Virus record (IMG/VR): IMGVR_UViG_3300033143_001962
Coordinates: 1 to 64,000 of that record
Strand: one strand, 5' to 3'
Length of the DNA: 64,000 nucleotides
In this document: positions 2,925-29,743 of the stretch, one piece after another
How the letters are laid out: each line of letters starts with the position of its first letter
Numbering within the stretch: the stretch's first letter is position 1
Notes under the pieces: model-generated
Told to the model about the DNA's origin: nothing
Database searches by the model: none
The model's input: only the letters and a program-made list of their open reading frames with translations
Position numbers and translations under genes: made by a program

Positions 2925-3156
2925 TTGCTAGGCCTTTTAGTTGTTCAATCAACTCTTTATCAAGTTCTTCTCGGATTCCAATGGCTAATTCTCTTGCCAT
3001 GAAGTCTTGGAATGTTTCTGTTGGCGCTCCATGTTGTAATCTGTGCCATACCTTTTCTTCTTCGGTCATGCCCGCTTCGTCATCAGAAGGCATTATGTCT
3101 GTACCTCTGATATCCCAATTAGCCATTAGTGGGTTAGCTGGTTTTTTATTAGTCAC
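2908..3156 (-). CDS. WxRL-tagged mini-protein with major-capsid backbone-helix fragment
   Basis: EEEKVWHRLQ tag. FMARELAIGIREELDKELIEQLKGLA resembles MCP EIMAALAQEITAEIDQEILLSLRSLA. Confidence 0.65.
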   Translation of the reverse strand: MTNKKPANPLMANWDIRGTDIMPSDDEAGMTEEEKVWHRLQHGAPTETFQDFMARELAIGIREELDKELIEQLKGLANEKHK

Positions 3157-3454
3157 TCATCTTTCCTCTTAATTCGCTTCTGCGTCCTGATATTATAATT
3201 AAATTATTACTTTTTGCAAAGTCCATTAAATGTTTGTACATTCCAGGCGCTTCTTCTTCGAGTCTATCGTCGATACATAATCCTGATGCACTGTGCTCGT
3301 CTACGAAACACGGGTGTACGTACTTGTGATATTGCATACGTTTATTAGCTCCGAATGATGCGGCGGTTCCTGCTAATCGTTTACACCAATCGCTTGGTCT
3401 GAACTTTTTACCTTCTGTAGTTATTCCTACTATTAATTTTGTCGGGTCTGGCAT
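3149..3454 (-). CDS. DUF3579-like protein
   Basis: GITTEGKKFRPSDWCKRL...DDRLEE..P.MY..LMDFAKSNNL matches the proteobacterial DUF3579 pattern as recalled. Confidence 0.7.
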   Translation of the reverse strand: MPDPTKLIVGITTEGKKFRPSDWCKRLAGTAASFGANKRMQYHKYVHPCFVDEHSASGLCIDDRLEEEAPGMYKHLMDFAKSNNLIIISGRRSELRGKMSD

Positions 3455-3474
3455 TTTAATCCTAAATGTTTCTG

Positions 3475-3666
3475 CTATTTAGCCCCGGATAATAACTTCC
3501 AATCTTTTCCATCATACGTCCACATGTCATCCGAACTGTGATCGAAGTAGATGCTGCCGGCTATAGGTTTAGCAAGCGGGTCACTAGTGAATTTTGGACC
3601 AGTGTATTTTAATCTATCCCAGACTTCTTGCTGCTCTTTAGTTAATTGTGGTGTACGTACTGACAT
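3475..3666 (-). CDS. WxRL-tagged mini-protein with tail-fibre repeat unit
   Basis: Likely start MSVRTPQ. Tag EQQEVWDRLK followed by GSIYFDHSSDDMWTYDGKDW. Confidence 0.65.
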   Translation of the reverse strand: MSVRTPQLTKEQQEVWDRLKYTGPKFTSDPLAKPIAGSIYFDHSSDDMWTYDGKDWKLLSGAK

Positions 3667-3946
3667 GCAAGTCTGCTCCGTCAGGTGGAGTTGATTTGAA
3701 CTGTATGGTAGTTGTTGCATTACTTTCAATACTGTAATCAAGTTTATGGCGTAGTTTGCAGCCGTCTTTAAAGACTTCGAATCGCACCTTCTCCAATGTA
3801 AGTGATGGTAATGCAAATACATCGCCCCAACCGTTACCTGTGAAGTGGTTTACACTTATTAGCCGGTCGCTAGCCTGCCTTAGTATATTCCACATTTCCT
3901 TTTTAGACTTAAATGCTTTTGTTATTGTTTTCTTAGGAAGTTTCAT
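3638..3946 (-). CDS. WxxL-tagged mini-protein with virion beta-repeat domain
   Basis: Likely start MKLPKK. Tag KKEMWNILR followed by FTGNG..F...V..DG...DYSI...F..PPDGA. Confidence 0.65.
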   Translation of the reverse strand: MKLPKKTITKAFKSKKEMWNILRQASDRLISVNHFTGNGWGDVFALPSLTLEKVRFEVFKDGCKLRHKLDYSIESNATTTIQFKSTPPDGADLHVSTYTTIN

Positions 3947-4218
3947 TTTAGTCTGCGCCACATTTCCCTTTTGTGATTCTCTTTACGCTCAGCTTTATTT
4001 CTTACATGCACAAAACGTTTATGCTCTACTATCTCATCTAAGTACGGGCAGTTAAACGCAATTTTATCTATGTCATAACTTTGCCCTACTGCTTGACAGG
4101 AGGTAGCAATGTACACACCATCTTGTGATCCGTCAGGCGAGCAGGCATCAATCTCCCACTCAATGTACTCCTGGCATTGTTTATTCCAGCAAAATTCGTT
4201 AAAGACTATGTCAGACAT
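3943..4218 (-). CDS. 4-Cys mini-protein with C-terminal WxRL tag
   Basis: Likely start MSDIV. FNEFCWNKQC...SC...NCPY; ends KREMWRRLK. Confidence 0.65.
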   Translation of the reverse strand: MSDIVFNEFCWNKQCQEYIEWEIDACSPDGSQDGVYIATSCQAVGQSYDIDKIAFNCPYLDEIVEHKRFVHVRNKAERKENHKREMWRRLK

Positions 4219-4522
4219 ATTGTAGTATCCTCCAAATCTTTTCCTTTTTCTTTTGCTTCTGCTCTTCTGCCCATTCCTTTTCAAACAGAAATTTTGCGCG
4301 GGCGTTAGTAACATGCCAATCAACCATACCTTGCAAATGCACACAATTATGCGGGTACGTAGGAATGTTTTCGTCGTTGTCTAAGATCTTAGAGCATGAT
4401 GCATATTCAACAGTGGACACATGAGTTATAAAACCATCTTCCATAATTAATTCTTCGCCGTACTCACTATAGCACTCGCACTCAAAATGATCTCTGCAAA
4501 GTTCGTACCAATTATAACTCAT
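4211..4522 (-). CDS. 4-Cys mini-protein with C-terminal WxxL tag
   Basis: YELCRDHFEC...SC...NCVH; ends KEKIWRILQYV. Confidence 0.65.
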   Translation of the reverse strand: MSYNWYELCRDHFECECYSEYGEELIMEDGFITHVSTVEYASCSKILDNDENIPTYPHNCVHLQGMVDWHVTNARAKFLFEKEWAEEQKQKKKEKIWRILQYV

Positions 4523-4731
4523 TTTAATTTATCCTCAGGGATGGACATTGCATCGTGTATCCTCTGCATGTACTGTTCTCTGAATTTATGCATCGTTGGC
4601 TGCACTGCTGTTTTAATAACATCTATATCTATATCTGCCCATCTATGCCAGCCAGTCTTAGGCTTGTTATCACCTTTAAGCTTATCCCACATTATCCACT
4701 TAGCTGTCTTTGTTTTCTTCGTCTTTTTCAT
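4519..4731 (-). CDS. WxKL-tagged mini-protein
   Basis: Likely start MKKTKK. Contains IMWDKLKGDNKPKTGW, shared with 6000..6311. Confidence 0.6.
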   Translation of the reverse strand: MKKTKKTKTAKWIMWDKLKGDNKPKTGWHRWADIDIDVIKTAVQPTMHKFREQYMQRIHDAMSIPEDKLK

Positions 4732-4969
4732 ATTCTGCTCTGGCTTGTGCAAACTGTTTGTTAGTAATCGGGAGGCCGTGTATCGTCCCGTAAATATCAT
4801 CGTCAGACATTGGCTGTATGCCTACTATATCATTTGCTAATAGTGTTGGCATTACCTTTCTAATCATTGGTATCACTATACTATCAAACCCGGGCTTGTG
4901 TACTTTCTTCAAAGCCCTGAATGTTTTTTGTGCGTCACTTATTGTCTTTTTAGTTAGTTTAAAAGACAT
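4700..4969 (-). CDS. mini-protein carrying the major-capsid Gol-region fragment
   Basis: IVIPMIRKVMPTLLANDIVGIQPMS is 15/25 identical to MCP residues 60-84 in this window. Confidence 0.75.
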   Translation of the reverse strand: MSFKLTKKTISDAQKTFRALKKVHKPGFDSIVIPMIRKVMPTLLANDIVGIQPMSDDDIYGTIHGLPITNKQFAQARAEYEKDEENKDS

Positions 4970-5234
4970 CTATGTACACCGGCATGTTGTTGATCCTTTT
5001 TAAGCTCTTTTCGGGCTCTAATAATTTCTTCCACATCATATCTTTTTTCTTTGCTTCATGCTTTGCTTTCTTAATATCTTCCATGTGTGGGCAATTTTCC
5101 GCTATCTTTAAAATATTAAATGTAATCTTGCTGGTGCCGATGCTGCATGTTATACACCTACCTACTTGCATTTTAATATCAGCGAAGTGCTTACACTCCT
5201 TTGCTCTGCAAAATTCGTTAAAGTTATACGCCAT
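4959..5234 (-). CDS. 4-Cys mini-protein with WxKL tag
   Basis: Likely start MAYNF. FNEFCRAKEC...TC...NCPH, tag KDMMWKKLL, tail INNMPVYIDVF. Confidence 0.65.
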   Translation of the reverse strand: MAYNFNEFCRAKECKHFADIKMQVGRCITCSIGTSKITFNILKIAENCPHMEDIKKAKHEAKKKDMMWKKLLEPEKSLKRINNMPVYIDVF

Positions 5235-5457
5235 TCCTATCATTATACACTTGATTGAGCAATGGTTCTACACCTTTGGATACATCGCGTATAACGCCAG
5301 GGTAGAATGAACTAATATCGTAATCGACTATATGCACACCTGGTTTCATTACGTGTCCTGTCTGTGACAGACGTTTCCACATTGCATCTTGCTCGCGTTT
5401 TAATTGCTTGCGCAAGCCGTTGCGTATTTTACGTTTAGTAATTTCTATTGCATTCAT
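5224..5457 (-). CDS. WxRL-tagged mini-protein with family B DNA polymerase motif A fragment
   Basis: Tag QDAMWKRLS followed by IVDYDISSFYPGVIR (compare PolB DxxSLYPSII). Confidence 0.65.
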   Translation of the reverse strand: MNAIEITKRKIRNGLRKQLKREQDAMWKRLSQTGHVMKPGVHIVDYDISSFYPGVIRDVSKGVEPLLNQVYNDRNGV

Positions 5458-5585
5458 TTATCATCTGGCTCGTTGAATATTATTTTAGCATTTTGGTAAT
5501 CTACCTGAAGCGGTATATACGGGCAATATATATAACCTGCGTTTACCTCTACTTCCACTGGAACGAATTTTAATTTGTCCCACAT
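5454..5585 (-). CDS. 43-aa WxKL-tagged mini-protein with capsid YCPYIPL fragment (not in ORF track)
   Basis: MWDKLKFVPVEVEVNAGYIYCPYIPLQVDYQNAKIIFNEPDDK; AAGGA RBS; ATGA overlap with the next gene. Confidence 0.7.
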   Translation of the reverse strand: MWDKLKFVPVEVEVNAGYIYCPYIPLQVDYQNAKIIFNEPDDK

Positions 5586-5601
5586 TATTTCCTTATCTGT
5601 T

Positions 5602-6003
5602 TTATTCGTGTTGTCCAAACTCTACTCTCTCGGCCATATTTTTCTTAATTTGATTCTGACGGTTCATATTATGAATTGTTCTAGCAAACGATGAGCGACA
5701 TAATACTGTTAAATACGAATACGCATTGCTACTCTTAGTTTCATCGTATCTGTGATAGTACCGTAACATATTAGTAATTGCGTCTTGTATTAAGTCCTCA
5801 GCGTATGTAAACGATTGAAAATTTTTCCTAGTTAATTCTTTCTCTGCTAAATGTACAAGGTACTTTGCTAAGTTGCCAGTCGTTTGTTTAATCAGTTTCG
5901 AGTGACGTATTGCTTCGCGTAACTCTGCGTTGGTTGTGATCTCAACTTGGTTGTACCATGGTGCTTTTAACTTACGCCAAAATAATTTTTGTTCTTTGTT
6001 CAT
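5602..6003 (-). CDS. compact gp55-like (late sigma) paralogue with N-terminal WxKL tag
   Basis: TTGNLAKYL..L.E...R.N...FTY.ED....A......Y DETKSSNAYSY.T....SF.R aligns with 28673..29653. Confidence 0.75.
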   Translation of the reverse strand: MNKEQKLFWRKLKAPWYNQVEITTNAELREAIRHSKLIKQTTGNLAKYLVHLAEKELTRKNFQSFTYAEDLIQDAITNMLRYYHRYDETKSSNAYSYLTVLCRSSFARTIHNMNRQNQIKKNMAERVEFGQHE

Positions 6004-6311
6004 ACAGAAGACGATTCAAAGTCTATTAGAATGGGGCTGTTTTTAGTACGTACTGCCCGGCCAAGACTCTGGAAAGCGATCATACTTTTCCCTACACCAG
6101 ACTGTGCTGTGAATCCATTTATGAAGCTACGGTTAATACCGTGCATGAAGTTTGATGCTTCTGCAAGATTCCGCCAACCTGTTTTCTTAGGTGTATTATC
6201 GCCACTAAGCTTGTTCCATATTTGCGAGGGTGTGCCGTGTATCTTTTCAAACTGCTTACGTTTGCCGTTTGCTATCTTACGTTTATTAATCTGTACTTTA
6301 CTTTCTTTCAT
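6000..6311 (-). CDS. WxKL-tagged mini-protein with RecA/DnaB-type Walker A fragment
   Basis: SQIWNKLS...TGWRNL...GINRSFINGFTAQSGVGKSMI...ILIDFE, then the protein ends. Confidence 0.65.
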   Translation of the reverse strand: MKESKVQINKRKIANGKRKQFEKIHGTPSQIWNKLSGDNTPKKTGWRNLAEASNFMHGINRSFINGFTAQSGVGKSMIAFQSLGRAVRTKNSPILIDFESSSV

Positions 6312-6463
6312 CGTGGTCCTGTATTCTTTGTTGGCTGTTTCATCGACAAAAATATACTAGATAGTAATTTCCATTCTTTCTGTGCTTCGGTGAGTGGAGG
6401 AGTGCTTAACTTCTTCCACATTTCGTGCTGTTCTCTTTCTTCTTTTGTTTTAAATATTTTCAC
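6308..6463 (-). CDS. WxKL-tagged mini-protein
   Basis: Likely GTG start after an AGGA RBS; EREQHEMWKKLS. Confidence 0.55.
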   Translation of the reverse strand: MKIFKTKEEREQHEMWKKLSTPPLTEAQKEWKLLSSIFLSMKQPTKNTGPR

Positions 6464-6743
6464 GGTGCTTCCTGAGTTTTGCTTTTGCTTGTACCCGTGT
6501 ACTAAAATCCGTAGATTCCACATCACGCATCAAATTTGCCAGTGCATCCCTTTCTTGTGCTAATCGTTTTTCTTCTTCGTAGTCAACATCAGCAGACATC
6601 ATTCGTGCTCTAATTCTGACAGACATATCCTGATCTTTACATAATAAATCCAAGTGCTTGCGGGTATGGATTAGCTCAATCTTTTCTTCTTGCGTCAGTG
6701 CTGAAATACGTAGCACATCAAATAAGTCTGTTTCAGTTGTCAT
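6450..6743 (-). CDS. small helical-repeat-like protein, paralogue of 8065..8268
   Basis: DLF..L...ALTQ.EK...I...KHLD....D.D..VR..AR. Confidence 0.6.
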   Translation of the reverse strand: MTTETDLFDVLRISALTQEEKIELIHTRKHLDLLCKDQDMSVRIRARMMSADVDYEEEKRLAQERDALANLMRDVESTDFSTRVQAKAKLRKHRENI

Positions 6744-6900
6744 ATAACGTTTTCTTCTTGCCCATTGTTGCCATTAAGTACGATCTGACTAGATAATTAT
6801 CTTGTACCGCGAAGTTAGGATCAATCCAATATGACTCAACGGCATGCTGAATGCTTCCGTACTTTAATTTTAAAAATGTTACCACTTGTTCAATTTCCAT
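6733..6900 (-). CDS. FLxLKYGS-family mini-protein, 55 aa (not in ORF track)
   Basis: MEIEQVVTFLKLKYGSIQHAVESYW...; directly downstream of a promoter. Confidence 0.65.
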   Translation of the reverse strand: MEIEQVVTFLKLKYGSIQHAVESYWIDPNFAVQDNYLVRSYLMATMGKKKTLYDN

Positions 6901-6949
6901 TTCTAATCGCCAATAGCCGCTTGTTTATGAGGTTGCGCTTTTAAGCTAC

Positions 6950-6979
6950 ATAATAACATTTTATGTTATAAAAAGTCAA
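6950..6979 (-). promoter_or_regulatory. sigma70-type early promoter
   Basis: TTGACT-18 nt-TATTAT with TGn extension. Confidence 0.6.
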
Positions 6980-6986
6980 GTATTTG

Positions 6987-7328
6987 CTAAACATCATTTG
7001 CCAAAATTGCTGTGGCTGATGGCTTTATGCGTTTACGATCGTTGTCGTACTGAGCTGTAGCAATTTCAATACTGCTTAAATGTTTTAATAATGAGTGGAG
7101 TTTTTTATCTTCGTTGCCTAACTTTGACCACATAATGTCTTTGCTGAACAAGGTGCGAATCGCGTTAACGTTTGTTTCAATTCTTTCTAACCTGCCATTG
7201 AACTCGCCTACGTTTCCATTGTGCTGCCGGACCGTGTGTGCGAGCTTAGTTTTCAACCCCGAAATTTCATCGTCTTTGTCACGGAGTTGTTGTTGCAGGT
7301 CTCTAATTAAATTCTTCTTAGCTGTCAT
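6987..7328 (-). CDS. coiled-coil protein with internal WxKL tag
   Basis: Heptad-rich N-half; KDIMWSKLG. Confidence 0.6.
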   Translation of the reverse strand: MTAKKNLIRDLQQQLRDKDDEISGLKTKLAHTVRQHNGNVGEFNGRLERIETNVNAIRTLFSKDIMWSKLGNEDKKLHSLLKHLSSIEIATAQYDNDRKRIKPSATAILANDV

Positions 7329-7380
7329 AAATCACCTAAATGTTATCAATACTACGCTTTCTTACTACGACTACGAGCTA

Positions 7381-7409
7381 AGTATAACATTTTTTGGTGC
7401 AGAAGTCAA
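7381..7409 (-). promoter_or_regulatory. sigma70-type early promoter
   Basis: TTGACT-17-TATACT with TGn extension. Confidence 0.75.
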
Positions 7410-7582
7410 GCTTTTCGCTTATTTAGGTTAATAAAGTTGTAATTATTGTATTGTTCTTTGGAGTACAGTAGGAGTGCTTTGTGTTCGTCGTTGGATAGAT
7501 TGATATCATTGTTGACCCAAAGGTCGAATGCGTTTGTCATGCTGCCGTACTTGAGAATTAGAAAGGTTTTTGCCTGGTCCAT
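7406..7582 (-). CDS. FLxLKYGS-family mini-protein, 58 aa (not in ORF track)
   Basis: MDQAKTFLILKYGSMTNAFDLW... Confidence 0.65.
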   Translation of the reverse strand: MDQAKTFLILKYGSMTNAFDLWVNNDINLSNDEHKALLLYSKEQYNNYNFINLNKRKA

Positions 7583-7634
7583 AGTAAATATTTACCATAG
7601 TACGGCTTTTTACGTGGGGGCGCTTTTGACCCTA

Positions 7635-7663
7635 AGTATAACGTTTTGTTATTTAAAAGTCAA
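7635..7663 (-). promoter_or_regulatory. sigma70-type early promoter
   Basis: TTGACT-17-TATACT. Confidence 0.75.
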
Positions 7664-7869
7664 GTTTTTATTAGCAGTTTGAAGAACATTGCGTCTTGCT
7701 CTTGCTCAAACCAGAAGACTGGGGCGGTGTACTGATATATAAATTTGCCAGTGGTGTGCTTGCTGCACCATGCGGATAGTTCTAATAGATTATTTTTACT
7801 ATGTGTGAATGATACTTTATACCATGTGTTTCTATCAAAGGCATCGTAACATTCTTGATTCTTTTTCAT
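7660..7869 (-). CDS. small hypothetical phage protein (W-C...FWFEQEQDAMFFKL type)
   Basis: Overlaps the upstream gene (ATGA); motif style common in small phage proteins. Confidence 0.6.
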   Translation of the reverse strand: MKKNQECYDAFDRNTWYKVSFTHSKNNLLELSAWCSKHTTGKFIYQYTAPVFWFEQEQDAMFFKLLIKT

Positions 7870-8072
7870 CGGAAGTTATTTATTTTTTTCAGTATATCAA
7901 GCAACTCCGGAATGTCCGGGTGTAAGTCCGGATCAATGCTATCCAGCCAGTGCTTGAACTCTTGGTCGTATTTTTGTATATTGATTTCTTTAATGAGCTC
8001 TAATTTCTGCTCGGTGGTTAAATACTCTTTGGTTAATCTATGCCACAGTTCTTTCTTTTCTTCTTCACTCAC
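7866..8072 (-). CDS. mini-protein with N-terminal WxRL tag
   Basis: MSEEEKKELWHRLT. Confidence 0.6.
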   Translation of the reverse strand: MSEEEKKELWHRLTKEYLTTEQKLELIKEINIQKYDQEFKHWLDSIDPDLHPDIPELLDILKKINNFR

Positions 8073-8268
8073 TTTGCCATCCTAGCGTTTTAAGTTGTTT
8101 GTTTATTCTAACGTACTCTTGTTTATGCTTTTGCTTTCTTGCGTATCTTCTAACTTCACTATCATCATCGTTTTCAAAATAATCTAAGTGCTTGTTACTA
8201 GCAATGCATAACATCTTTTCGTACTGAGTGAGGGCGTTTAATTTTATAATTGTGAATAAATCTTCCAT
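8065..8268 (-). CDS. paralogue of 6450..6743
   Basis: Likely start MEDLF; ALTQYEK...KHLDYFENDDDSEVRRYAR. Confidence 0.6.
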   Translation of the reverse strand: MEDLFTIIKLNALTQYEKMLCIASNKHLDYFENDDDSEVRRYARKQKHKQEYVRINKQLKTLGWQSE

Positions 8269-8373
8269 AGCTATGTCTGTGTTTTTGCGCTTGGGCAACT
8301 CACTTCGTGCCTTGCGTTCTCTCTGTAAGTTACAGTCGAACCTACTCACCAAGCTCCTTGCTTTCGCAGACTA

Positions 8374-8403
8374 AGCATAACATATTTTAGAGGCAAAAGT
8401 CAA
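8374..8403 (-). promoter_or_regulatory. sigma70-type early promoter
   Basis: TTGACT-18-TATGCT with TGn extension. Confidence 0.6.
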
Positions 8404-8418
8404 CCGAGGTTTGCCAAA

Positions 8419-8859
8419 CTAAACGTTGTCGTTTTCATGTAGGCGTGTGTATAATGATAGTGCTAAATCAAATTGCATAATATGTGACATTATCCAGGGA
8501 CGGATTATCGATACTAAGTAGTATCCCATAACTTTTGGATTATGCGATAACTGTGATGTGTCAGCAACTTGATGACGTATATCATTGTGTGATTCTTTGT
8601 GACAATCGGCTGCTAATTTAGGAAATCCAATTCTATGCATTAGTGCTTCTTCGTGTTCTAAATGTGTGTCAACGTAGTCAACTAGCTCATCGTAGTACTG
8701 CTGAATGTGCTCTATTGTTGGGTCATCGTGTGTAATTTCGTTAATAATATTATTGCATAATTTAAACAGATTTCGGTGTTCGTTATCTATTTGTAAGTCG
8801 CCTGTTTCAAGGTCAGGTTGCCATTCTAACGGCGTTAGATTATCGGATTGTGGGGTCAT
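8419..8859 (-). CDS. bacteriohemerythrin
   Basis: W...LETGDLQIDNEH..LF, HLEHEEALM, HKESH, WIMSHIMQFD: complete hemerythrin di-iron ligand set (H, HxxxE, HxxxH, HxxxxD). Confidence 0.9.
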   Translation of the reverse strand: MTPQSDNLTPLEWQPDLETGDLQIDNEHRNLFKLCNNIINEITHDDPTIEHIQQYYDELVDYVDTHLEHEEALMHRIGFPKLAADCHKESHNDIRHQVADTSQLSHNPKVMGYYLVSIIRPWIMSHIMQFDLALSLYTRLHENDNV

Positions 8860-8891
8860 TGTATAGTCCTATTTTAAGTTAGCTATTAGTA

Positions 8892-8920
8892 ATTGTAGCA
8901 CGGAATCGCACCAAAGTCTA
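8892..8920 (-). promoter_or_regulatory. sigma70-type promoter for hemerythrin
   Basis: TAGACT-17-TACAAT with TGn; a GATAAATA late-type box also lies at 8930..8937. Confidence 0.55.
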
Positions 8921-8942
8921 GTAGTTTTTTATTTATCGTGTT

Positions 8943-9089
8943 TCATTTTAATGCAAAAAATTCGTTAAGCATATTGAATTCTGCTACTGGCATTTTAGCG
9001 ACTGCTGACCAATTCATCATCATATCATATGCTTTTTGTTGTGATCCGTACTTAATAACAATGAATGATTTTATTTCTTCAGTACTCAT
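8943..9089 (-). CDS. FLxLKYGS-family mini-protein
   Basis: Likely start MSTEEIKSFIVIKYGSQQKAYD. Confidence 0.6.
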   Translation of the reverse strand: MSTEEIKSFIVIKYGSQQKAYDMMMNWSAVAKMPVAEFNMLNEFFALK

Positions 9090-9261
9090 AAGTGTACGCT
9101 CCTGTTCGGCGATTATTGTCTTTTGCCCATTGTGCAATCAGATCTGATTCTTCTTGTGTAAATGAGGTATCATCAAATTTATACATCCATTCTTCATAAG
9201 CAAGTATCATACTACCGTACTTTAGTACAAGAATTAGTTCAGTGTCTTTACCCGTTTTCAT
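9079..9261 (-). CDS. FLxLKYGS-family mini-protein
   Basis: ELILVLKYGSMILAYEEW. Confidence 0.65.
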   Translation of the reverse strand: MKTGKDTELILVLKYGSMILAYEEWMYKFDDTSFTQEESDLIAQWAKDNNRRTGAYTYEY

Positions 9262-9403
9262 CTGACCACCATTCCATAAATTCAGTTAGCATTGCGTCGA
9301 GATCTGTACCTAAATCGTCACCTGTAAAATTACAATACACCATTACAATGTCATCATTGGACCCGTAACGTAATCTTAAATATGTTAGTACCGCTGGATT
9401 CAT
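9248..9403 (-). CDS. FLxLKYGS-family mini-protein, 51 aa (not in ORF track)
   Basis: MNPAVLTYLRLRYGSNDDIVMVY...; ATGA overlap with 9400..9618. Confidence 0.6.
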   Translation of the reverse strand: MNPAVLTYLRLRYGSNDDIVMVYCNFTGDDLGTDLDAMLTEFMEWWSDENG

Positions 9404-9618
9404 GCTTTTAACTTTGCCCACATGTACAATCTATTAATTTCTTCGTCAAACTCAGGTGTGCGTATCGTGTACCCTTTGCCGTTAATTCTATACTGGTAAT
9501 TATCAAAATCGTAAGTCTTAGGTGCAGAGACTCTGTAGTGTCTGACCCAGAACAATGTGCCATTTAAGCATTCGTATACTACATCACGTTGGTGCATTAT
9601 AACCGAGACACTATTCAT
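9400..9618 (-). CDS. RINGxxY-family mini-protein with C-terminal WxKL tag
   Basis: YRINGKGY...EFDEEINRLYMWAKLKA. Confidence 0.6.
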   Translation of the reverse strand: MNSVSVIMHQRDVVYECLNGTLFWVRHYRVSAPKTYDFDNYQYRINGKGYTIRTPEFDEEINRLYMWAKLKA

Positions 9619-9940
9619 CTTTCTTCTCCGGGACGTGGTCTACTACTAATCTAAGTTCATGCATTGTTAAACGTGTGTACATACCAGGTGGTAGATTTAT
9701 CCAGTAATGATATGCATTAAACACTGACCCGTACTTCCAAATTAGTACCATCTCGGCGTTATCTTTAGTAACATCCAATGTCTCCAGGCAGCCCTGTTCG
9801 CACCATAAATTTAATAGTGGTGGTACATTTTCAACTGTTCTGACTCCTGGCATGTTAACTGCTACTTCAAACGCTGTGATCACTTCTCCGATTGAAGAGT
9901 ACTTAAGTGACAGGAATACTTGCTGTTCATCTTCAGTCAC
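9611..9940 (-). CDS. tandem two-domain FLxLKYGS-family protein
   Basis: VFLSLKYSS and MVLIWKYGSVFNAY. Confidence 0.65.
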   Translation of the reverse strand: MTEDEQQVFLSLKYSSIGEVITAFEVAVNMPGVRTVENVPPLLNLWCEQGCLETLDVTKDNAEMVLIWKYGSVFNAYHYWINLPPGMYTRLTMHELRLVVDHVPEKKDE

Positions 9941-10124
9941 TTAGCTTCTCCCACACACGTTCTTTCTTACGTTCTTCATAAAATGCTTTTCTGTACTCAA
10001 GTGTATTTTCACTGTACAGTACATCGTTAATACGAAGTGTAACCCAGCTTTGTGAAATTGCACTTTGTCGTAGCGTACTGCATACTTGCGCAAATTTACC
10101 ACTGCTTAATTCAATTTCAATCAC
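9933..10124 (-). CDS. RINGxxY-family mini-protein with C-terminal WxKL tag
   Basis: LRINDVLY...KERVWEKLSD. Confidence 0.6.
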   Translation of the reverse strand: MIEIELSSGKFAQVCSTLRQSAISQSWVTLRINDVLYSENTLEYRKAFYEERKKERVWEKLSD

Positions 10125-10311
10125 TTAGCTTCTGCCATATCTCTGCTTTTTCAATAAATTCTGTTGCTGCTCGTCTAAATGCGTACGAATCTTTTTTGTA
10201 AATAACACCTTTAATTCTGAACGTGTGCCACGCAAAATTAGGATTCTTTAAACGTGGCACATTAGCCTTCACCCAATACCCGCAGTACTTTTCTCTATAA
10301 TGTGCTTTCAT
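10117..10311 (-). CDS. RINGxxY-family mini-protein with C-terminal WxKL tag
   Basis: FRIKGVIY...KAEIWQKLSD. Confidence 0.6.
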   Translation of the reverse strand: MKAHYREKYCGYWVKANVPRLKNPNFAWHTFRIKGVIYKKDSYAFRRAATEFIEKAEIWQKLSD

Positions 10312-10320
10312 ACCCGCCTA

Positions 10321-10497
10321 CTAATAGTTGTGCTCTTGCTGAACAAATCGATAATACCAATCTAACATCTCGTGTCGTTGTACTGTAGTAAACAAATCAT
10401 AATCGCTTCGTAAGTCGCCGTCACGCATTGCGTCGTAAGCGTTAGCCATGCTCCCGTACTTTAATATTAAGAATGTTCTAGTCTTTTCAGGACTCAT
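10321..10497 (-). CDS. FLxLKYGS-family mini-protein, 58 aa (not in ORF track)
   Basis: MSPEKTRTFLILKYGSMANAYDAM... Confidence 0.65.
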   Translation of the reverse strand: MSPEKTRTFLILKYGSMANAYDAMRDGDLRSDYDLFTTVQRHEMLDWYYRFVQQEHNY

Positions 10498-10696
10498 TGT
10501 ACAATTCCTTTATGAAGAAGTCAAGCATCAATTCTTCTTGTTGATTAACATTCATTAAATGGTATGCTATCTGGTCTCCGAATTCAAGCGAGTCATGAAA
10601 CGCATCAGCTAACTGTTCTAAGCCGCCGTGTTTAAGTGCTAAGAATGTGTATTCCTCGGTTGTTATAAAATCATCAAGTTCAACGGTTTCAGTCAT
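10487..10696 (-). CDS. FLxLKYGS-family mini-protein
   Basis: YTFLALKHGGLEQLADAF. Confidence 0.6.
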   Translation of the reverse strand: MTETVELDDFITTEEYTFLALKHGGLEQLADAFHDSLEFGDQIAYHLMNVNQQEELMLDFFIKELYNES

Positions 10697-10697
10697 T

Positions 10698-10886
10698 TTA
10701 ATCCCACATGTACCTGCGTCTGTTCAATTCACTGTCAGTTGCGTAGTAAAAGTAATTGTTCATTATTGTGTAGTCATCCGGCACTTGCTTTCCAACAACG
10801 GTACTAGTATTCATAAAGACTTGATAGGCTTTGTACACCGTACCGTACTTTAAAATTAAATAAGATTTAGTTGCTGCGTAGTTCAT
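10698..10886 (-). CDS. FLxLKYGS-family mini-protein
   Basis: KSYLILKYGTVYKAYQVF. Confidence 0.65.
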   Translation of the reverse strand: MNYAATKSYLILKYGTVYKAYQVFMNTSTVVGKQVPDDYTIMNNYFYYATDSELNRRRYMWD

Positions 10887-11086
10887 AATATGATCTTCTG
10901 TACACGTTCAGGAATTATTAAATCACCTTGTTCCTTTTTAGATTTAATATGCGATTGAATAAAGCTTAGTAATTTGTAGTAGTCTGGATCACTGTCGAGT
11001 CCTAGTGATCGCAATGCACTGTACCTAGAAAAGATATGTGCTACGCTTCCATATTTAAGCATAAGGAATGTGTCTTCAGAATTCAT
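10883..11086 (-). CDS. FLxLKYGS-family mini-protein
   Basis: DTFLMLKYGSVAHIF. Confidence 0.65.
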   Translation of the reverse strand: MNSEDTFLMLKYGSVAHIFSRYSALRSLGLDSDPDYYKLLSFIQSHIKSKKEQGDLIIPERVQKIIL

Positions 11087-11277
11087 TAAATTAAATCCAT
11101 TGCATATTCCATTGCAGATTTAGTTCTTATCGCAAGATGGTGTGCCCAAGCATACCCTACTATCATGCATTGTTCATCTTCTGTAAAATCAGCATCCCAA
11201 TCATCAGATATGTTATAAGCATCAATGGCATTTTCCATGCTACCGTACTTTAATATTAAGAATGTTTTAATTGGCAT
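11086..11277 (-). CDS. FLxLKYGS-family mini-protein
   Basis: KTFLILKYGSMENAIDAY. Confidence 0.65.
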   Translation of the reverse strand: MPIKTFLILKYGSMENAIDAYNISDDWDADFTEDEQCMIVGYAWAHHLAIRTKSAMEYAMDLI

Positions 11278-11516
11278 TATGATTTACCGTACACTGTGGT
11301 AATTGTAGGGGCAAATACCCCATTCAATGCTGCCCAAGCTTCTAATGGTTTTACTACTTCATCGAACTCATCGGATGGTTTTTCATATATAAACCCATTT
11401 ATTTTAAAGTCAAACCTCTTAAAATTGTACTGGCGATCAGCCATTATTGTTGACTCTCTCCATACGCTGTCAAAGATTTCTCTATTTTTTGAGTACAAAA
11501 TGTCCTGATTAGCCAT
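11277..11516 (-). CDS. RINGxxY-family mini-protein
   Basis: Likely start MANQD, downstream of the promoter; FKINGFIY...EFDEVVKPLEAWAALN. Confidence 0.6.
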   Translation of the reverse strand: MANQDILYSKNREIFDSVWRESTIMADRQYNFKRFDFKINGFIYEKPSDEFDEVVKPLEAWAALNGVFAPTITTVYGKS

Positions 11517-11546
11517 GGTTATTACCCTTCTGAACGAATATAATGT

Positions 11547-11575
11547 AGTGTAACAGGTTATTTTGGGAAAGTCAA
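11547..11575 (-). promoter_or_regulatory. sigma70-type early promoter heading the mini-gene array
   Basis: TTGACT-17-TACACT with TGn extension. Confidence 0.7.
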
Positions 11576-11608
11576 GCTTTTGATAGGCACTCATTAATAA
11601 ATATATTA

Positions 11609-12091
11609 GTGAACTACTTAATACTAATTGACGTTTGGGGACGATTGTCAACACCGTTAGAGATCATTTGTAAAACTAATATAGCATTATTAATATCTGA
11701 TGTCTCAGACAATCCAAATTGGAAAATAATATATCAGGATTTTGATCCTGATATCGATCCTAAAATTCAGCACGTTTGCAACAATTCAAATAATGCAATA
11801 CCCGAGCACGATTGGGCTAATTTAAAATTAGATTCAAAAGACATAGTGTACTTTGCTGGGTTTCATGCTAATCACTGTTTGTTTGAGAAACCGTTAGGTA
11901 TTGATAATCTATTAAGTTTGCACCCTGCTCAAGAATTTTTTGTGTTATCCGACCTAACATGTGGGCTGAATCAACACACTCCTGTACCTATCAGTGACTT
12001 ATCTATTATTAATTTCAATAATGATTATAGTGTAAAAATGAACATGCGGCGCGCAATGCTGCTCGATAATTTACTTAGTATACAAATTTAA
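11609..12091 (+). CDS. isochorismatase/cysteine-hydrolase-like protein
   Basis: LILIDVW ... VYFAGFHANHCL ... VLSDLT. Confidence 0.55.
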   Translation: MNYLILIDVWGRLSTPLEIICKTNIALLISDVSDNPNWKIIYQDFDPDIDPKIQHVCNNSNNAIPEHDWANLKLDSKDIVYFAGFHANHCLFEKPLGIDNLLSLHPAQEFFVLSDLTCGLNQHTPVPISDLSIINFNNDYSVKMNMRRAMLLDNLLSIQI

Positions 12092-12094
12092 GTC

Positions 12095-12123
12095 AAAAAA
12101 AAGCACTCCGAAGAGTGCTTTTT
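12095..12123 (-). terminator. intrinsic terminator after major capsid gene (likely bidirectional)
   Basis: Minus strand AAAAAGCACTC-TTCG-GAGTGCTTTTTTTT with a UUCG tetraloop. Confidence 0.9.
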
Positions 12124-27797: not shown

Positions 27798-28686
27798 GAA
27801 GCTCCTTTGGGTATGTATATGTCCATAATTCTGTTGTTGTTTTGGGAAAGTCGTCACCAATGTCATTACATCTTAATTCGAGATTTAATTCTTCTCTAAG
27901 ATATTTTTGTATGTATGCTTCGTCGTATACGGTACTGTCGTCTGGCATGTTGCAATTAATGTGTTTAGTAAAGTTATCTAAGAACAGTGCTATATCTTTG
28001 TCCTTATTAAGGTGCTTTTGTAAGCTTAACATTTCATTGTGATTTGTCATTATAGTGTCGTAACTTTCGGTTACGTCGAAGTTAAGTTCACGCGCTAACC
28101 GCATTAATGTATTTTTAAAATCAAATAATAAATCTTTGATGTTGATTTCAATACACTTGTCCTTGCTATTATATTCGCCAACTGAATTTACGCCTTTGAT
28201 AAATTCTTTATAACTGTAAAATTCTCGCATGTTTGCAACTTTTGAAAAATCCTCATCATTGATTTCTTTTCTATGCTGGTCTATTAGATATCTGTCATGA
28301 ACTTTATCGTGCTTGTTGTTGCGAATTAATAAATGCATGTCTGCGTCGGATCTAATTAATATACCTTTGACAACTTTTGATAAAATGTAATCAACACTTT
28401 CACCAGCACTCGAATCGGTTAAGTCACGCTCGTCATTAAATACATGATGCATTCGGAAAAACGGAAGTGTGTCTGGCCCGTGTACATGTTGCTCGAACGT
28501 AGGCATGTTAATCCTTGAGTTATATATTGTGAAATTTTTCTGCGTGTGAGAATTGCCATTCTTTCCCCACGGCAATTCCGGACTATCACAAAGCCCAATG
28601 CTGGTAAAATTGTTAAGTACCCAATAAAGATACGACCCGTATGCTCCAGGCTCGTATATTATAGGTATTGTTTTACTTTTTGTCAA
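27790..28686 (-). CDS. hypothetical protein, possible sulfotransferase-like P-loop fold
   Basis: N-terminal IIYEPGAYGSYL loop. Confidence 0.35.
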   Translation of the reverse strand: MTKSKTIPIIYEPGAYGSYLYWVLNNFTSIGLCDSPELPWGKNGNSHTQKNFTIYNSRINMPTFEQHVHGPDTLPFFRMHHVFNDERDLTDSSAGESVDYILSKVVKGILIRSDADMHLLIRNNKHDKVHDRYLIDQHRKEINDEDFSKVANMREFYSYKEFIKGVNSVGEYNSKDKCIEINIKDLLFDFKNTLMRLARELNFDVTESYDTIMTNHNEMLSLQKHLNKDKDIALFLDNFTKHINCNMPDDSTVYDEAYIQKYLREELNLELRCNDIGDDFPKTTTELWTYTYPKELHE

Positions 28687-29653
28687 GTTTCTCGTCTGTT
28701 AAATGTTTGTCGTCTGAGTTGTCATTACTAAACTGTCTAGTCCAGCTAGGAGTTAGTCCGTTAGCTTCTAAAATGTCATCACGTATGTTCTGCATCTTCT
28801 TCTCGATGTTTAGTACCCTGGTAAAGCTGTTAGTAACTGCGGCAGTGTAGTACGCAAATGGATTTTGTGATTTCATTTCATTAAACTGTAGTCCAATTTG
28901 ACTAAGCTGTAATAAAGCTTGCCCTTGCATCTCATCATTGTAAGTATAACCACGCCAGTTACTGCGCGTTCCGTAACGTTCGCATAACTTCATGTACATC
29001 ATTGCTAAGTTGCCAGTCGTCCGCCCGTGATCTTTATTAAATGCACCAGTTTCTAAATCACCTTTCCAATGACTCTTACCTACTAGCTGTACTGCCATAG
29101 CATTATCGCCTTCCATAGCAAACCCGTGGTCTGCTAACTTTGAAACACGGTAGTGATAAAATGCAGGAAAGCCACAACGCATAGGAATCATTTCTACTTC
29201 GAGCCCAGTGCCGTCTAGTAACTCTAATTCATCGTCGTTTAATAAATCATCAAACACTGCATTAGCTTTTGCCTGCTTAGCCGCTTTAGCAGTAGCAGCT
29301 TTTGATTTCTTTTTAGGTACAAGTGGAATGTGTTCTGTAGTCATTACTCTGTAAACTACATCTTCTAATTTGATATCTTCTAATTCGGTGGGAATGTCAA
29401 GCTTTGTTAAGCGTGTTGCCCTTGCCTGTCTGCCAAGTAGTGTAACCGGTACGTCTTCCATGATGGGCTTTCCATCTTTGTCTTTGCTTACTTCGACATT
29501 TTGTGTACCCCAAATGTCCGATAAGTTTTCTACTATGAAGTCTTGTTGATTGTCTTCTACTTTGTCCAGAAAAGAACAGTATGAAATTTTACTTAAGTGT
29601 ATCTCTTTCAACATATCCTTGTTATTTAAATAATTCTTTTTACGTTTAGCCAT
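28673..29653 (-). CDS. gp55: late transcription sigma factor (gp55-like)
   Basis: NYLNNKDML, RSNWRGYTYNDEM, FNEMKSQNPFAYYT; adjacent to gp47/gp46 as in T4; likely start MAKRKK. Confidence 0.85.
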   Translation of the reverse strand: MAKRKKNYLNNKDMLKEIHLSKISYCSFLDKVEDNQQDFIVENLSDIWGTQNVEVSKDKDGKPIMEDVPVTLLGRQARATRLTKLDIPTELEDIKLEDVVYRVMTTEHIPLVPKKKSKAATAKAAKQAKANAVFDDLLNDDELELLDGTGLEVEMIPMRCGFPAFYHYRVSKLADHGFAMEGDNAMAVQLVGKSHWKGDLETGAFNKDHGRTTGNLAMMYMKLCERYGTRSNWRGYTYNDEMQGQALLQLSQIGLQFNEMKSQNPFAYYTAAVTNSFTRVLNIEKKMQNIRDDILEANGLTPSWTRQFSNDNSDDKHLTDEKLDKK

Positions 29654-29681
29654 ACATCTCCTTGTAGCTTTAGATTTAACT

Positions 29682-29709
29682 ATTATAGCACATAAGCATA
29701 ATAAGTCAA
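29682..29709 (-). promoter_or_regulatory. sigma70-type promoter for gp55-47-46 operon
   Basis: TTGACT-16-TATAAT with TGn extension. Confidence 0.7.
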
Positions 29710-29743
29710 CCATAATTTATTATATTGGGTTATAATATGTACT

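What the first reader, a model, noticed from the sequence alone, without database searches (positions are those of the whole stretch)
6000..6311. Truncated helicase/recombinase P-loop behind the tag
TGWRNL...GINR..INGFTAQSGVGKS...ILIDFE reproduces the start of a RecA-fold ATPase (DnaB/gp41 H1-H1a or UvsX) and stops before Walker B, so it cannot be a working ATPase. The WNKLSGDNTPKKTGW junction is shared with 4519..4731 (WDKLKGDNKPKTGW), again suggesting modular shuffling.
Basis: partly seen in the sequence, partly recalled or inferred. Interest (0 to 1): 0.6.

Follow-up and report, generated by a model that had tools for sequence, protein, structure and literature searches.

The report
Conserved mini-protein built from helicase piece
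A jumbo T4-related phage keeps, under clear purifying selection, a 103-residue early gene that joins a shared basic leader to only the first ~70 residues of the ATPase region of a gp41/DnaB-type replicative helicase, so it is probably a maintained helicase mimic and not a dead fragment.

Summary
Window 6000..6311 (-) is a real 103-aa ORF with a Walker A loop (res 69-76) and an H1a-like glutamate (E99), and it ends 4 residues later. It is gp41/DnaB-like, not UvsX-like. Against gp41 profiles, hhalign gives Prob 87-94% (P 1e-7 to 5e-6), aligning res 28-99 with T4 gp41 158-227. The score exceeds every shuffle that keeps Walker A and every other natural P-loop tested. The UvsX profile gives Prob <=1%.

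It is not a pseudogene. A 98-aa orthologue from another metagenome is 63-65% identical. It has the same end point and the same ATGA overlap with a mini-gp55 gene. Its indels are all in frame, and pN is 0.22 against a saturated pS of 0.79. It is more conserved than the neighbouring sigma-like gene.

Residues 1-36 form a basic leader shared with other small ORFs that carry different C-termini, so modular shuffling is supported. Neighbouring ORFs carry pieces of gp23 and gp55.

The protein lacks Walker B, H3, H4 and the arginine finger, so it cannot be an autonomous helicase. The most likely role, by inference only, is an early-expressed helicase-subunit mimic. Only two members are known.

The parts
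6000..6311 (-). The 103-aa ORF (stop included): basic leader plus helicase-derived piece
   Evidence: orthologue P0003
6317..6320 (-). AGGA ribosome-binding site, 7 nt before ATG 6311..6309. The ATG overlaps the stop of upstream ORF 6308..6526 (ATGA).
6204..6311 (-). Residues 1-36: basic N-terminal leader (..INKRKIANGKRKQFEK..) ending in the IWNKL 'tag'. It is shared with other small ORFs. pN 0.124 against pS 0.77.
6207..6221 (-). Tag IWNKL (res 31-35). The W is replaced by M in the orthologue.
6141..6230 (-). Residues 28-57: region collinear with the gp41 linker and TGW motif (TGW = 6174..6182). Weakly supported and poorly conserved (pN 0.42).
6015..6140 (-). Residues 58-99: gp41/DnaB-like H1 to H1a block (strand, P-loop, helix, strand, Glu). 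It aligns without gaps to T4 gp41 186-227.
6084..6107 (-). Walker A AQSGVGKS (res 69-76), identical in the orthologue
6015..6017 (-). E99, aligned with the H1a glutamate (T4 gp41 E227). The Lys-to-Glu spacing is 24 in both proteins.
5602..6003 (-). Translationally coupled downstream gene: 133-aa mini gp55-like sigma with an N-terminal LFWRKL tag. Same synteny in L004.
6308..6526 (-). Upstream coupled small ORF, also tag-bearing (EMWKKL)
6950..6979 (-). Nearest upstream early-promoter-like site: TTGACT, 18-nt spacer, TATTAT, with TG upstream of the second hexamer
4519..4731 (-). Paralogue sharing tag plus GDNxPKxTGW with the ORF, then diverging
   Evidence: no gp41 signal of its own
5224..5457 (-). 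Paralogue sharing the basic leader (..ITKRKIRNG.RKQ..MWKRL) with a different C-terminus

Best explanation
The ORF is a functional small gene, probably expressed early, of an uncultivated jumbo T4-related phage. Its product has two parts. Residues 1-36 are a basic helical leader that this phage group places on many small ORFs. Behind it sits a ~70-residue piece captured from a gp41/DnaB-type (SF4) replicative helicase gene. That piece runs from the linker/TGW motif through Walker A (H1) to the H1a glutamate, and the protein ends there.

Shown: the coding status, the purifying selection on both parts, the conserved end point, the helicase (not recombinase) parentage, and the modular leader.

Follows from the sequence: without Walker B/H2, H3, H4 and the arginine finger it cannot hydrolyse NTP or translocate as a RecA-fold enzyme on its own.

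Inferred: it acts as a subunit mimic, a microprotein-type regulator. In SF4 rings the NTP site lies between subunits, and the linker of one protomer packs on its neighbour. A protein that keeps only the P-loop face, and perhaps the linker, could dock on a gp41/DnaB protomer of the phage itself, of a co-infecting relative or of the host. It would then cap, open or poison the ring early in infection. My confidence that the identity is right is about 0.85, and that the mimic mechanism is right about 0.3.
For: Coding and expression signals: codon score, AGGA site and ATGA coupling on both sides. There is an enriched, strand-specific early-promoter-like motif: 11 sites against 3.95+-1.85 expected, all on the minus strand, the nearest at 6979..6950.

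Selection: orthologue P0003 is 63-65% identical with the same stop and the same synteny with the mini-gp55. Over the whole ORF pN is 0.216 against pS 0.794 (Fisher 2e-16). In the helicase-like block alone it is 0.196 against 0.75 (9e-8). All indels are multiples of 3. The ORF is more conserved than the adjacent sigma-like gene, which is 51% identical.

Parentage: hhalign Prob 86.6 to 94% and P 4.5e-6 to 1.4e-7 against gp41 profiles, including the gp41 of five relatives from the same capsid clade (30% identity over 44 columns). Shuffle and natural P-loop controls score lower. Weak Pfam and PDB hits are mostly to RecA-superfamily families: divDNAB, AAA_25, AAA_24 and KaiC, plus one weak PhoH hit. 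ESM Atlas gives DnaB_C clusters at 0.93-0.94 and TM 0.67-0.77 to KaiC/SF4 models over res 28-103.

Context favouring mimicry: neighbouring small ORFs hold short conserved pieces of other core proteins. One is gp23 57-84, which corresponds to T4 gp23 95-118. Another is the gp55 core.
Against: Nothing shows binding to a helicase. Complex prediction gave no verdict.

The phage's own gp41 is not in the 72%-complete record, so the cognate pair could not be examined.

A strand-loop-helix-strand piece is unlikely to fold alone. The AF2 single-sequence model was poor (pLDDT 50) and the Atlas model is only pLDDT 0.61.

The selection estimate rests on one pair of sequences. The linker part of the homology is weak (score 18.1 against a shuffle maximum of 18.4). 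No Pfam hit reaches a curated threshold. The tag's W is not conserved in the orthologue.
Confidence: 0.45

Rival explanations
1. It is a stand-alone phospho-ligand or nucleic-acid binder. The basic leader plus a single strand-(P-loop)-helix element oligomerises and binds NTP, polyphosphate, ssDNA or RNA, as engineered 40-55-residue P-loop prototypes do. It acts on nucleic acids or nucleotide pools and has nothing to do with the helicase it came from.
For: The Walker A loop and E99 are strictly conserved, which suggests ligand binding is kept. The leader is strongly basic. Engineered one-element P-loop polypeptides bind NTPs and ssDNA, separate strands and act as oligomers (bioRxiv 10.1101/2020.07.30.228619).
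Against: The leader also occurs on ORFs without any P-loop. Conservation extends well beyond the loop to helix alpha1 and strand beta2, which suits a protein interface as well as it suits ligand binding.
Confidence: 0.2
2. It works with the co-translated mini-gp55. The two coupled products form a complex that tunes host RNA polymerase or the replication-coupled late transcription switch.
For: The order mini-helicase piece, mini-gp55, 54-aa ORF, with the ATGA overlap, is conserved in both known phages. A separate full-size gp55 sits at the canonical place beside gp47/gp46 (28673..29713), so the mini-gp55 is an extra copy.
Against: Neighbouring genes alone are weak evidence for binding. In another relative (L010/L011) the mini-gp55 is preceded by different ORFs.
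Confidence: 0.1
3. The P-loop resemblance is chance in an unrelated small protein.
For: No hit reaches a curated family threshold: divDNAB E 0.14, AAA_25 0.07, KaiC 0.84. The Walker A pattern occurs by chance in genomes. There are only two sequences for the profile.
Against: The score exceeds all 150 Walker-A-preserving shuffles and all other natural P-loops tested. The 42-column alignment has no gaps and the Lys-to-Glu spacing is identical. Two separate gp41 profiles agree, and the language-model and structure searches point the same way. An upstream collinear extension includes TGW.
Confidence: 0.08
4. It is the N-terminal piece of a split helicase whose remainder is encoded elsewhere (in the missing 28% of the genome) and assembles with it.
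For: No DnaB_C/gp41 gene is found in the 250-kb record. T4-type phages are known to carry split essential genes (own knowledge).
Against: All five large relatives carry one complete ~460-480-aa gp41 with its own H1/H1a, and none has the mini ORF. The piece is only ~30% identical to those gp41s. It is fused to a leader shared with unrelated ORFs.
Confidence: 0.05
5. It is neutral debris of illegitimate recombination in a hyperplastic region (a plain pseudogene fragment).
For: It lies in a hypervariable array and is absent from 80 capsid relatives and 5 large records.
Against: pN is 0.22 against pS 0.79. All indels are in frame, start and stop are conserved, and it is better conserved than the neighbouring sigma-like gene.
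Confidence: 0.03

Closest known systems
T4 gp41 / DnaB-family (SF4) replicative helicases
   Same: Res 28-99 align collinearly with T4 gp41 158-227 and with the clade's own gp41 126-197. Shared features are the TGW motif, the G..R..LN.. strand, Walker A, helix alpha1 and strand beta2 ending in the H1a Glu, with identical Lys-to-Glu spacing.
   Different: Only ~70 of ~470 residues are present. There is no N-terminal primase-binding domain, Walker B/H2, H3, H4 DNA loop or arginine finger. No Pfam DnaB_C hit. The piece is fused to an unrelated basic leader.
Small early ORFs of T4-type hyperplastic regions, shuffled via promoter/stem-loop cassettes (PeSLs; PMC2839356, PMC4122927)
   Same: It lies in an array of small, tightly coupled ORFs between core blocks. 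The array varies between close relatives and is punctuated by a repeated sigma70-like promoter motif. One composite hairpin-plus-promoter lies right after gp23 (12098..12123 / 12068..12096).
   Different: Here the shuffled unit also lies inside the proteins: a shared leader or tag with exchangeable C-termini. Some payloads are pieces of core genes. Most promoter copies lack a clear upstream stem-loop.
Engineered beta-(P-loop)-alpha prototypes (Vyas et al., bioRxiv 10.1101/2020.07.30.228619)
   Same: A single P-loop element of about 40-55 residues without the rest of the fold. Those polypeptides bind NTP and ssDNA and act as oligomers.
   Different: The prototypes are designed ancestral-style sequences. 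This is a natural gene under selection in a phage, and its activity is untested.
MicroProteins, i.e. dominant-negative truncated paralogues (concept from plants and animals; own knowledge)
   Same: A small protein homologous to one part of a larger multi-domain, oligomeric protein, lacking the catalytic parts.
   Different: Not described for phage helicases as far as my searches show. Complex formation is unproven here.
Short viral DnaB_C/KaiC/RecA_N-bearing clusters in the ESM Atlas (73-110 aa)
   Same: Nearest neighbours by language-model features (0.93-0.96) and by predicted structure (TM 0.67-0.77).
   Different: They may be contig-end fragments of full genes. No sequence-level homology was detectable: phmmer over 1.84 billion representatives found only one full-length relative.

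Membership tests
SF4 (DnaB/gp41) helicase | Walker A (H1) after a beta-strand | tested here: met
   AQSGVGKS, res 69-76, aligned to T4 gp41 197-204
SF4 (DnaB/gp41) helicase | H1a glutamate about 24 residues after the Walker lysine | tested here: met
   K75 to E99 is 24 residues, and T4 gp41 K203 to E227 is 24. The two are aligned without gaps.
SF4 (DnaB/gp41) helicase | Walker B/H2, H3, H4 DNA-binding loop, arginine finger | tested here: not met
   The protein ends at res 103. The stop is conserved in the orthologue, and the next codons belong to the mini-gp55.
SF4 (DnaB/gp41) helicase | N-terminal primase-interacting domain | tested here: not met
   Res 1-27 are a basic leader shared with non-helicase ORFs.
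SF4 (DnaB/gp41) helicase | Pfam DnaB_C (PF03796) above the gathering score | tested here: not met
   No DnaB_C hit. divDNAB scores 11.2 bits against a cut-off of 26. AAA_25 scores 13 bits against 27.
RecA/UvsX recombinase | Profile similarity to UvsX around Walker A | tested here: not met
   hhalign Prob 0.8-1.0% against a 6-sequence UvsX profile
T4-type hyperplastic-region early ORF | Lies in a variable block between core genes and differs between close relatives | tested here: met
   Absent from 80 loci with 79-89% identical capsid genes and from 5 large records
T4-type hyperplastic-region early ORF | Flanked by early promoter / stem-loop cassettes | tested here: inconclusive
   The promoter motif is enriched and strand-specific, but a hairpin accompanies only the copy at 12096. 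There are no expression data.
MicroProtein-type mimic | Small protein homologous to part of a larger oligomeric protein, lacking the catalytic parts | tested here: met
MicroProtein-type mimic | Forms a non-productive complex with the parent protein | not testable with these tools
   The one complex prediction gave no verdict, and the cognate gp41 is absent from the record.

The most novel reading that the evidence does not exclude
The early array at ~3-10 kb is a toolkit of leader-tagged mimics, each carrying the most conserved interaction segment of a core phage machine. The segments are the gp41 linker/P-loop face, the gp55 core that binds RNA polymerase, and the gp23 segment that matches T4's Gol region, which binds EF-Tu. 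The mimics would serve as dominant-negative weapons against co-infecting relatives, or as decoys or tuners for host factors and sensors that recognise those segments. The helicase piece would be one member of a new class of phage 'fragment mimics'.
Probability: 0.15. Interest if true: 0.85.

Novelty: new variant of a known kind. Interest (0 to 1): 0.55.

Why it matters
A natural one-element P-loop protein under selection would be a rare living counterpart of the minimal P-loop polypeptides studied as models of early enzymes.

If it binds a replicative helicase, it would be a new kind of phage-encoded helicase regulator or inhibitor, made by recycling a piece of the target itself. Pieces of gp23 and gp55 in neighbouring ORFs, behind the same tag or leader, suggest a general way in which jumbo phages turn fragments of core genes into small regulators. 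That idea is directly testable with cloned ORFs.

The case also warns annotators that a 'truncated ATPase' in a phage variable region need not be a pseudogene.

Tried and rejected
Searches that found nothing:
- megablast of 4 kb against GenBank phages.
- PHROGs for the ORF.
- PDB phmmer with the whole protein gave only noise, such as choline-binding repeats.
- The word search found only the query itself, and the query plus P0003 when given the profile.
- tblastn against phages gave only E~8-10 hits to RadA/primase P-loops.
- IMG/VR scans with the ORF and with the mini-gp55 found no close relatives.

Artefacts set aside: in the big search, hits P0002 (4710 aa) and P0004 (1819 aa) come from summing 44 and 5 repeats that score 0.6-8 bits each. 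BLASTP finds nothing for P0002.

Structure and complex prediction:
- The AF2 single-sequence model was too poor to use (pLDDT 50). I therefore ran no fold search on it.
- hhalign against single T4 gp41 or UvsX sequences lacked power.
- Complex prediction of the mini-protein with the helicase domain (res 150-420) of a relative's gp41 gave no answer. This is neither support nor evidence against.

Other tests:
- DnaB_C, RecA, divDNAB, T4 gp41 and T4 UvsX found nothing in the 250-kb record.
- Other tag-bearing ORFs show no gp41 signal, so the tag as such is not helicase-derived.
- The T4 late-promoter word TATAAATA is not enriched in the window and none of its four matches lies in the array.
- No sequencing run was listed.

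Full report
WHAT IS THERE. The minus frame is the coding one. Codon usage trained on the genome's long genes gives +0.32 bit/codon, like its neighbours. The longer plus-strand ORF 5989..6360 scores -0.15 and is a shadow. An AGGA lies 7 nt before the ATG. That ATG overlaps the stop of the upstream ORF (ATGA), and the ORF's own TGA overlaps the ATG of the next gene.

GENOME CONTEXT.
- The window is the left end of a 249,797-bp IMG/VR virus record, estimated 72% complete.
- The record carries T4-type portal, prohead protease and major capsid genes at 12-18 kb. It also has gp46, gp47 and a long gp55 at 24-30 kb, and gp43 at 214-217 kb.
- The capsid protein is 79-89% identical to many uncultivated contigs of up to 374 kb. 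It is 64-68% identical to jumbo phages such as Vibrio phage 2.275.O and Pseudomonas phage PA5oct.
- A strong hairpin ends the gp23 transcript at 12098..12123.
- From there down to about 2.5 kb runs an array of small, overlapping minus-strand ORFs. It is punctuated by a repeated promoter-like motif, TTGACT-N16-18-TAnnnT. There are 11 copies in the window against 3.95+-1.85 expected. All are on the minus strand and 7 lie within 6950..12096. The nearest one upstream of the ORF is at 6979..6950.
- This looks like the hyperplastic early regions of T4-type phages (PMC2839356, PMC4122927). Early expression is inferred, not shown. No sequencing run was listed.

HOMOLOGUES AND SELECTION. Word search and family scans left the protein open, so I used the one exhaustive search. 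It found a single full-length relative, P0003 (98 aa, 63-65% identity), plus two proteins that share only residues 1-56. It also returned two repeat artefacts.

P0003 lies on two short metagenome contigs. It is followed, with the same 4-nt overlap, by a 132-aa gp55-like gene and a 55-aa ORF, exactly as in the window.
- Both proteins end just after LIDFE.
- The DNA differs mostly at third codon positions (29/18/51 differences at positions 1/2/3).
- All three indels are multiples of three.
- By the Nei-Gojobori method, pN is 0.216 against a saturated pS of 0.794 (Fisher 2e-16). For the leader (res 1-36) the values are 0.124 and 0.77. For the helicase-like block (res 58-99) they are 0.196 and 0.75 (9e-8). 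The spacer (res 37-57) is loose at 0.42.
- The ORF is better conserved than the adjacent sigma-like gene, which is 51% identical.

It is therefore a maintained gene, not a decaying fragment. The family is rare. A profile search found only these two. None of 80 capsid-relative loci or 5 large relatives' records carries it.

IS IT A RecA-FOLD START, AND OF WHICH FAMILY? Curated libraries give only sub-threshold hits. These are mostly to RecA-superfamily families: divDNAB at E 0.14, AAA_25 at 0.07, AAA_24 at 0.085 and KaiC in the PDB at 0.84, plus one weak PhoH hit at 0.14.

I built profiles from ten phage gp41 proteins and six UvsX proteins taken from GenBank records.
- The two-sequence profile of res 48-103 aligns without gaps to T4 gp41 186-227, with Prob 86.6%, P 4.5e-6 and score 39.1.
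- Full column shuffles give 12.0+-2.1. Shuffles that keep Walker A in place give 26.5+-3.1 with a maximum of 36.3.
- Ten other natural P-loop segments (AAA+, PhoH-like, clamp-loader-like, Rad50-like) give 8-26.
- The UvsX profile gives Prob 1%.

Five large relatives each carry one complete gp41. Against these the block is 30% identical over 44 columns (Prob 82%). With all 15 gp41s the Prob is 92.9%. With the full-length mini-protein the alignment extends to res 28-99 against T4 gp41 158-227 (Prob 94%, P 1.4e-7). This brings the mini-protein's TGW onto the helicase's conserved TGW motif. On its own that upstream part is weak: score 18.1 at the collinear position, against shuffles of 11+-2.2 with a maximum of 18.4.

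The ESM Atlas points the same way. DnaB_C-bearing clusters score 0.93-0.94 by features. By structure, KaiC, SF4-helicase and RecA_N models score TM 0.67-0.77 over res 28-103. The parent is therefore a gp41/DnaB-type helicase. The donor cannot be named.

THE LEADER, THE TAG AND MODULARITY. The motif hydrophobic-W-x-[KR]-L occurs in 15 consecutive minus-strand ORFs between 3.0 and 10.2 kb. The whole genome's six frames contain only 55 W-x-[KR]-L matches. The codons differ between copies, so the motif is kept at the protein level. It sits at the N-terminus, in the middle or at the C-terminus of its ORF.

A longer leader (M-K/S-E-S/T-K-x-Q-x-N-x-RKIRNG-x-RK...) precedes different C-termini:
- this helicase piece;
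- an unknown module in P0005;
- a gp23 piece in P0006 (Pfam Gp23 E 9e-6, equal to own gp23 168-206);
- two further ORFs of locus L010;
- window ORF 5224..5457.

ORF 4519..4731 shares the tag plus GDNxPKxTGW and then diverges. Other tag ORFs have no gp41 signal. In the orthologue the tag's W is M. Modular exchange behind a common leader is thus supported.

Payloads that are pieces of core genes recur:
- ORF 4700..4969 carries own gp23 57-84, which corresponds to T4 gp23 95-118.
- L010 carries the same gp23 piece behind ITWERL.
- The coupled 133-aa gene is the core of gp55, lacking the long protein's other parts.

HOW IT MOST LIKELY WORKS. The protein keeps strand beta1, the P-loop, helix alpha1 and strand beta2 with the H1a Glu. 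It lacks everything else a RecA-fold motor needs, so autonomous NTPase or helicase activity is not expected. This follows from established knowledge of SF4 motifs H1 to H4.

Strict conservation of the loop, the helix and LIDFE says this surface is used. In SF4 rings the NTP site is formed between neighbouring subunits, and the linker of one subunit packs on the next (established knowledge). A protein keeping only these elements is well suited to dock on a helicase protomer and block or open the ring.

I rank this subunit-mimic reading first, at about 0.3. The rivals follow:
- a stand-alone phospho-ligand or nucleic-acid binder like the engineered P-loop prototypes, 0.2;
- a partner of the coupled mini-gp55, 0.1;
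- chance resemblance, 0.08;
- a split helicase, 0.05;
- neutral debris, 0.03.

The one complex prediction gave no verdict. The cognate gp41 is not in the record.

COMPARISON AND NOVELTY. The protein fails membership of the SF4 helicases because it lacks H2-H4, the NTD and a Pfam-threshold hit, although it derives from one. It fits the setting of T4-type hyperplastic early ORFs. It also fits the concept of microprotein-type truncated paralogues, for which I found no phage helicase precedent. I rate it a new variant of a known kind, of moderate interest.

CAVEATS. The selection analysis rests on two sequences. Profile probabilities of 87-94% are strong leads, not proof. The predicted structures are of low confidence. 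Expression timing is inferred from motifs. The exact borders of T4's Gol region come from my memory, while the review read here gives only 'a 29-residue region, the most conserved of gp23' (PMC3014915).

Noticed in passing
window 3048..10137, minus strand: Fifteen consecutive small ORFs each carry hydrophobic-W-x-[KR]-L, usually after a charged helix. It sits at the N-terminus, inside or at the very C-terminus. The codons vary, so it is a protein-level motif of unknown function. Scattered further copies lie at genome positions 71345(+), 105166, 156870, 192681 and 197789.
   Followed up: partly
window 4700..4969 (-); L010:814-1146: An 89-aa ORF carries a 28-residue piece of the phage's own major capsid protein (gp23 57-84, 54% identical; Pfam Gp23 35 bits). 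It corresponds to T4 gp23 95-118, which from memory lies within the Gol region that binds EF-Tu and triggers the Lit protease. A relative carries the same piece behind an ITWERL tag.
   Followed up: partly
window 5602..6003 (-) and 28673..29713 (-): There are two gp55-like late sigma genes. A 346-aa one sits at the canonical place beside gp47/gp46. An extra 133-aa mini version, equal to res 231-316 of the long one, has an N-terminal LFWRKL tag and lies in the small-ORF array. The mini version is conserved in L004, L010 and L011.
   Followed up: partly
window 6950..12096 (-), also 511, 29682, 45481, 56646: A repeated promoter-like motif, (a)agcTTGACTttt..N..tGTTATaCTtag, occurs 11 times against ~4 expected, always on the minus strand. 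The copy at 12068..12096 follows the gp23 terminator hairpin directly (12098..12123), like a PeSL cassette.
   Followed up: partly
P0006 = L010:1246-1563; genome ~156870 (-): P0006 joins the same leader to a 39-residue piece of gp23 (168-206). A similar '...VWNKLKDNK...LRGDWTVE' ORF exists in this genome near 156.9 kb.
   Followed up: no
window 8419..8859 (-): A 146-aa hemerythrin (HHE cation-binding domain, Pfam E 5e-13) sits inside the small-ORF array. PHROGs has no match for it.
   Followed up: partly
window 3943..4344, 4211..4522, 4959..5243 (-); L010:1733-2230, L011:876-1163: Several small ORFs share a Cys-rich pattern (F..FC....C..YIEWE ... C...GQSY.I......CPY), often ending in the tag. 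They look like a zinc-ribbon-type paralogue family. Two of them overlap each other in different frames.
   Followed up: no
window 39102..52130 (+): A single 4342-aa ORF lies in the structural region, preceded by an 1130-aa ORF. Not examined.
   Followed up: no
whole record G000: tblastn with T4 proteins gave no significant match to gp41, UvsX, gp61, gp44, gp62 or gp45 in 250 kb, although gp43, gp46 and gp47 are present and five relatives each have a gp41. The rest of the replication module is probably in the missing ~28% or too diverged to detect. A clamp-loader-like P-loop gene lies at 240.6-241.6 kb near the right end.
   Followed up: partly
L006:806-1048 (P0005): This leader-bearing 80-aa ORF ends ...IVDWDTTA, like the orthologue's ...LIDFETTA. 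It has no P-loop and sits before a dCMP deaminase gene. It may be a degenerate or differently recombined relative of the helicase piece.
   Followed up: no
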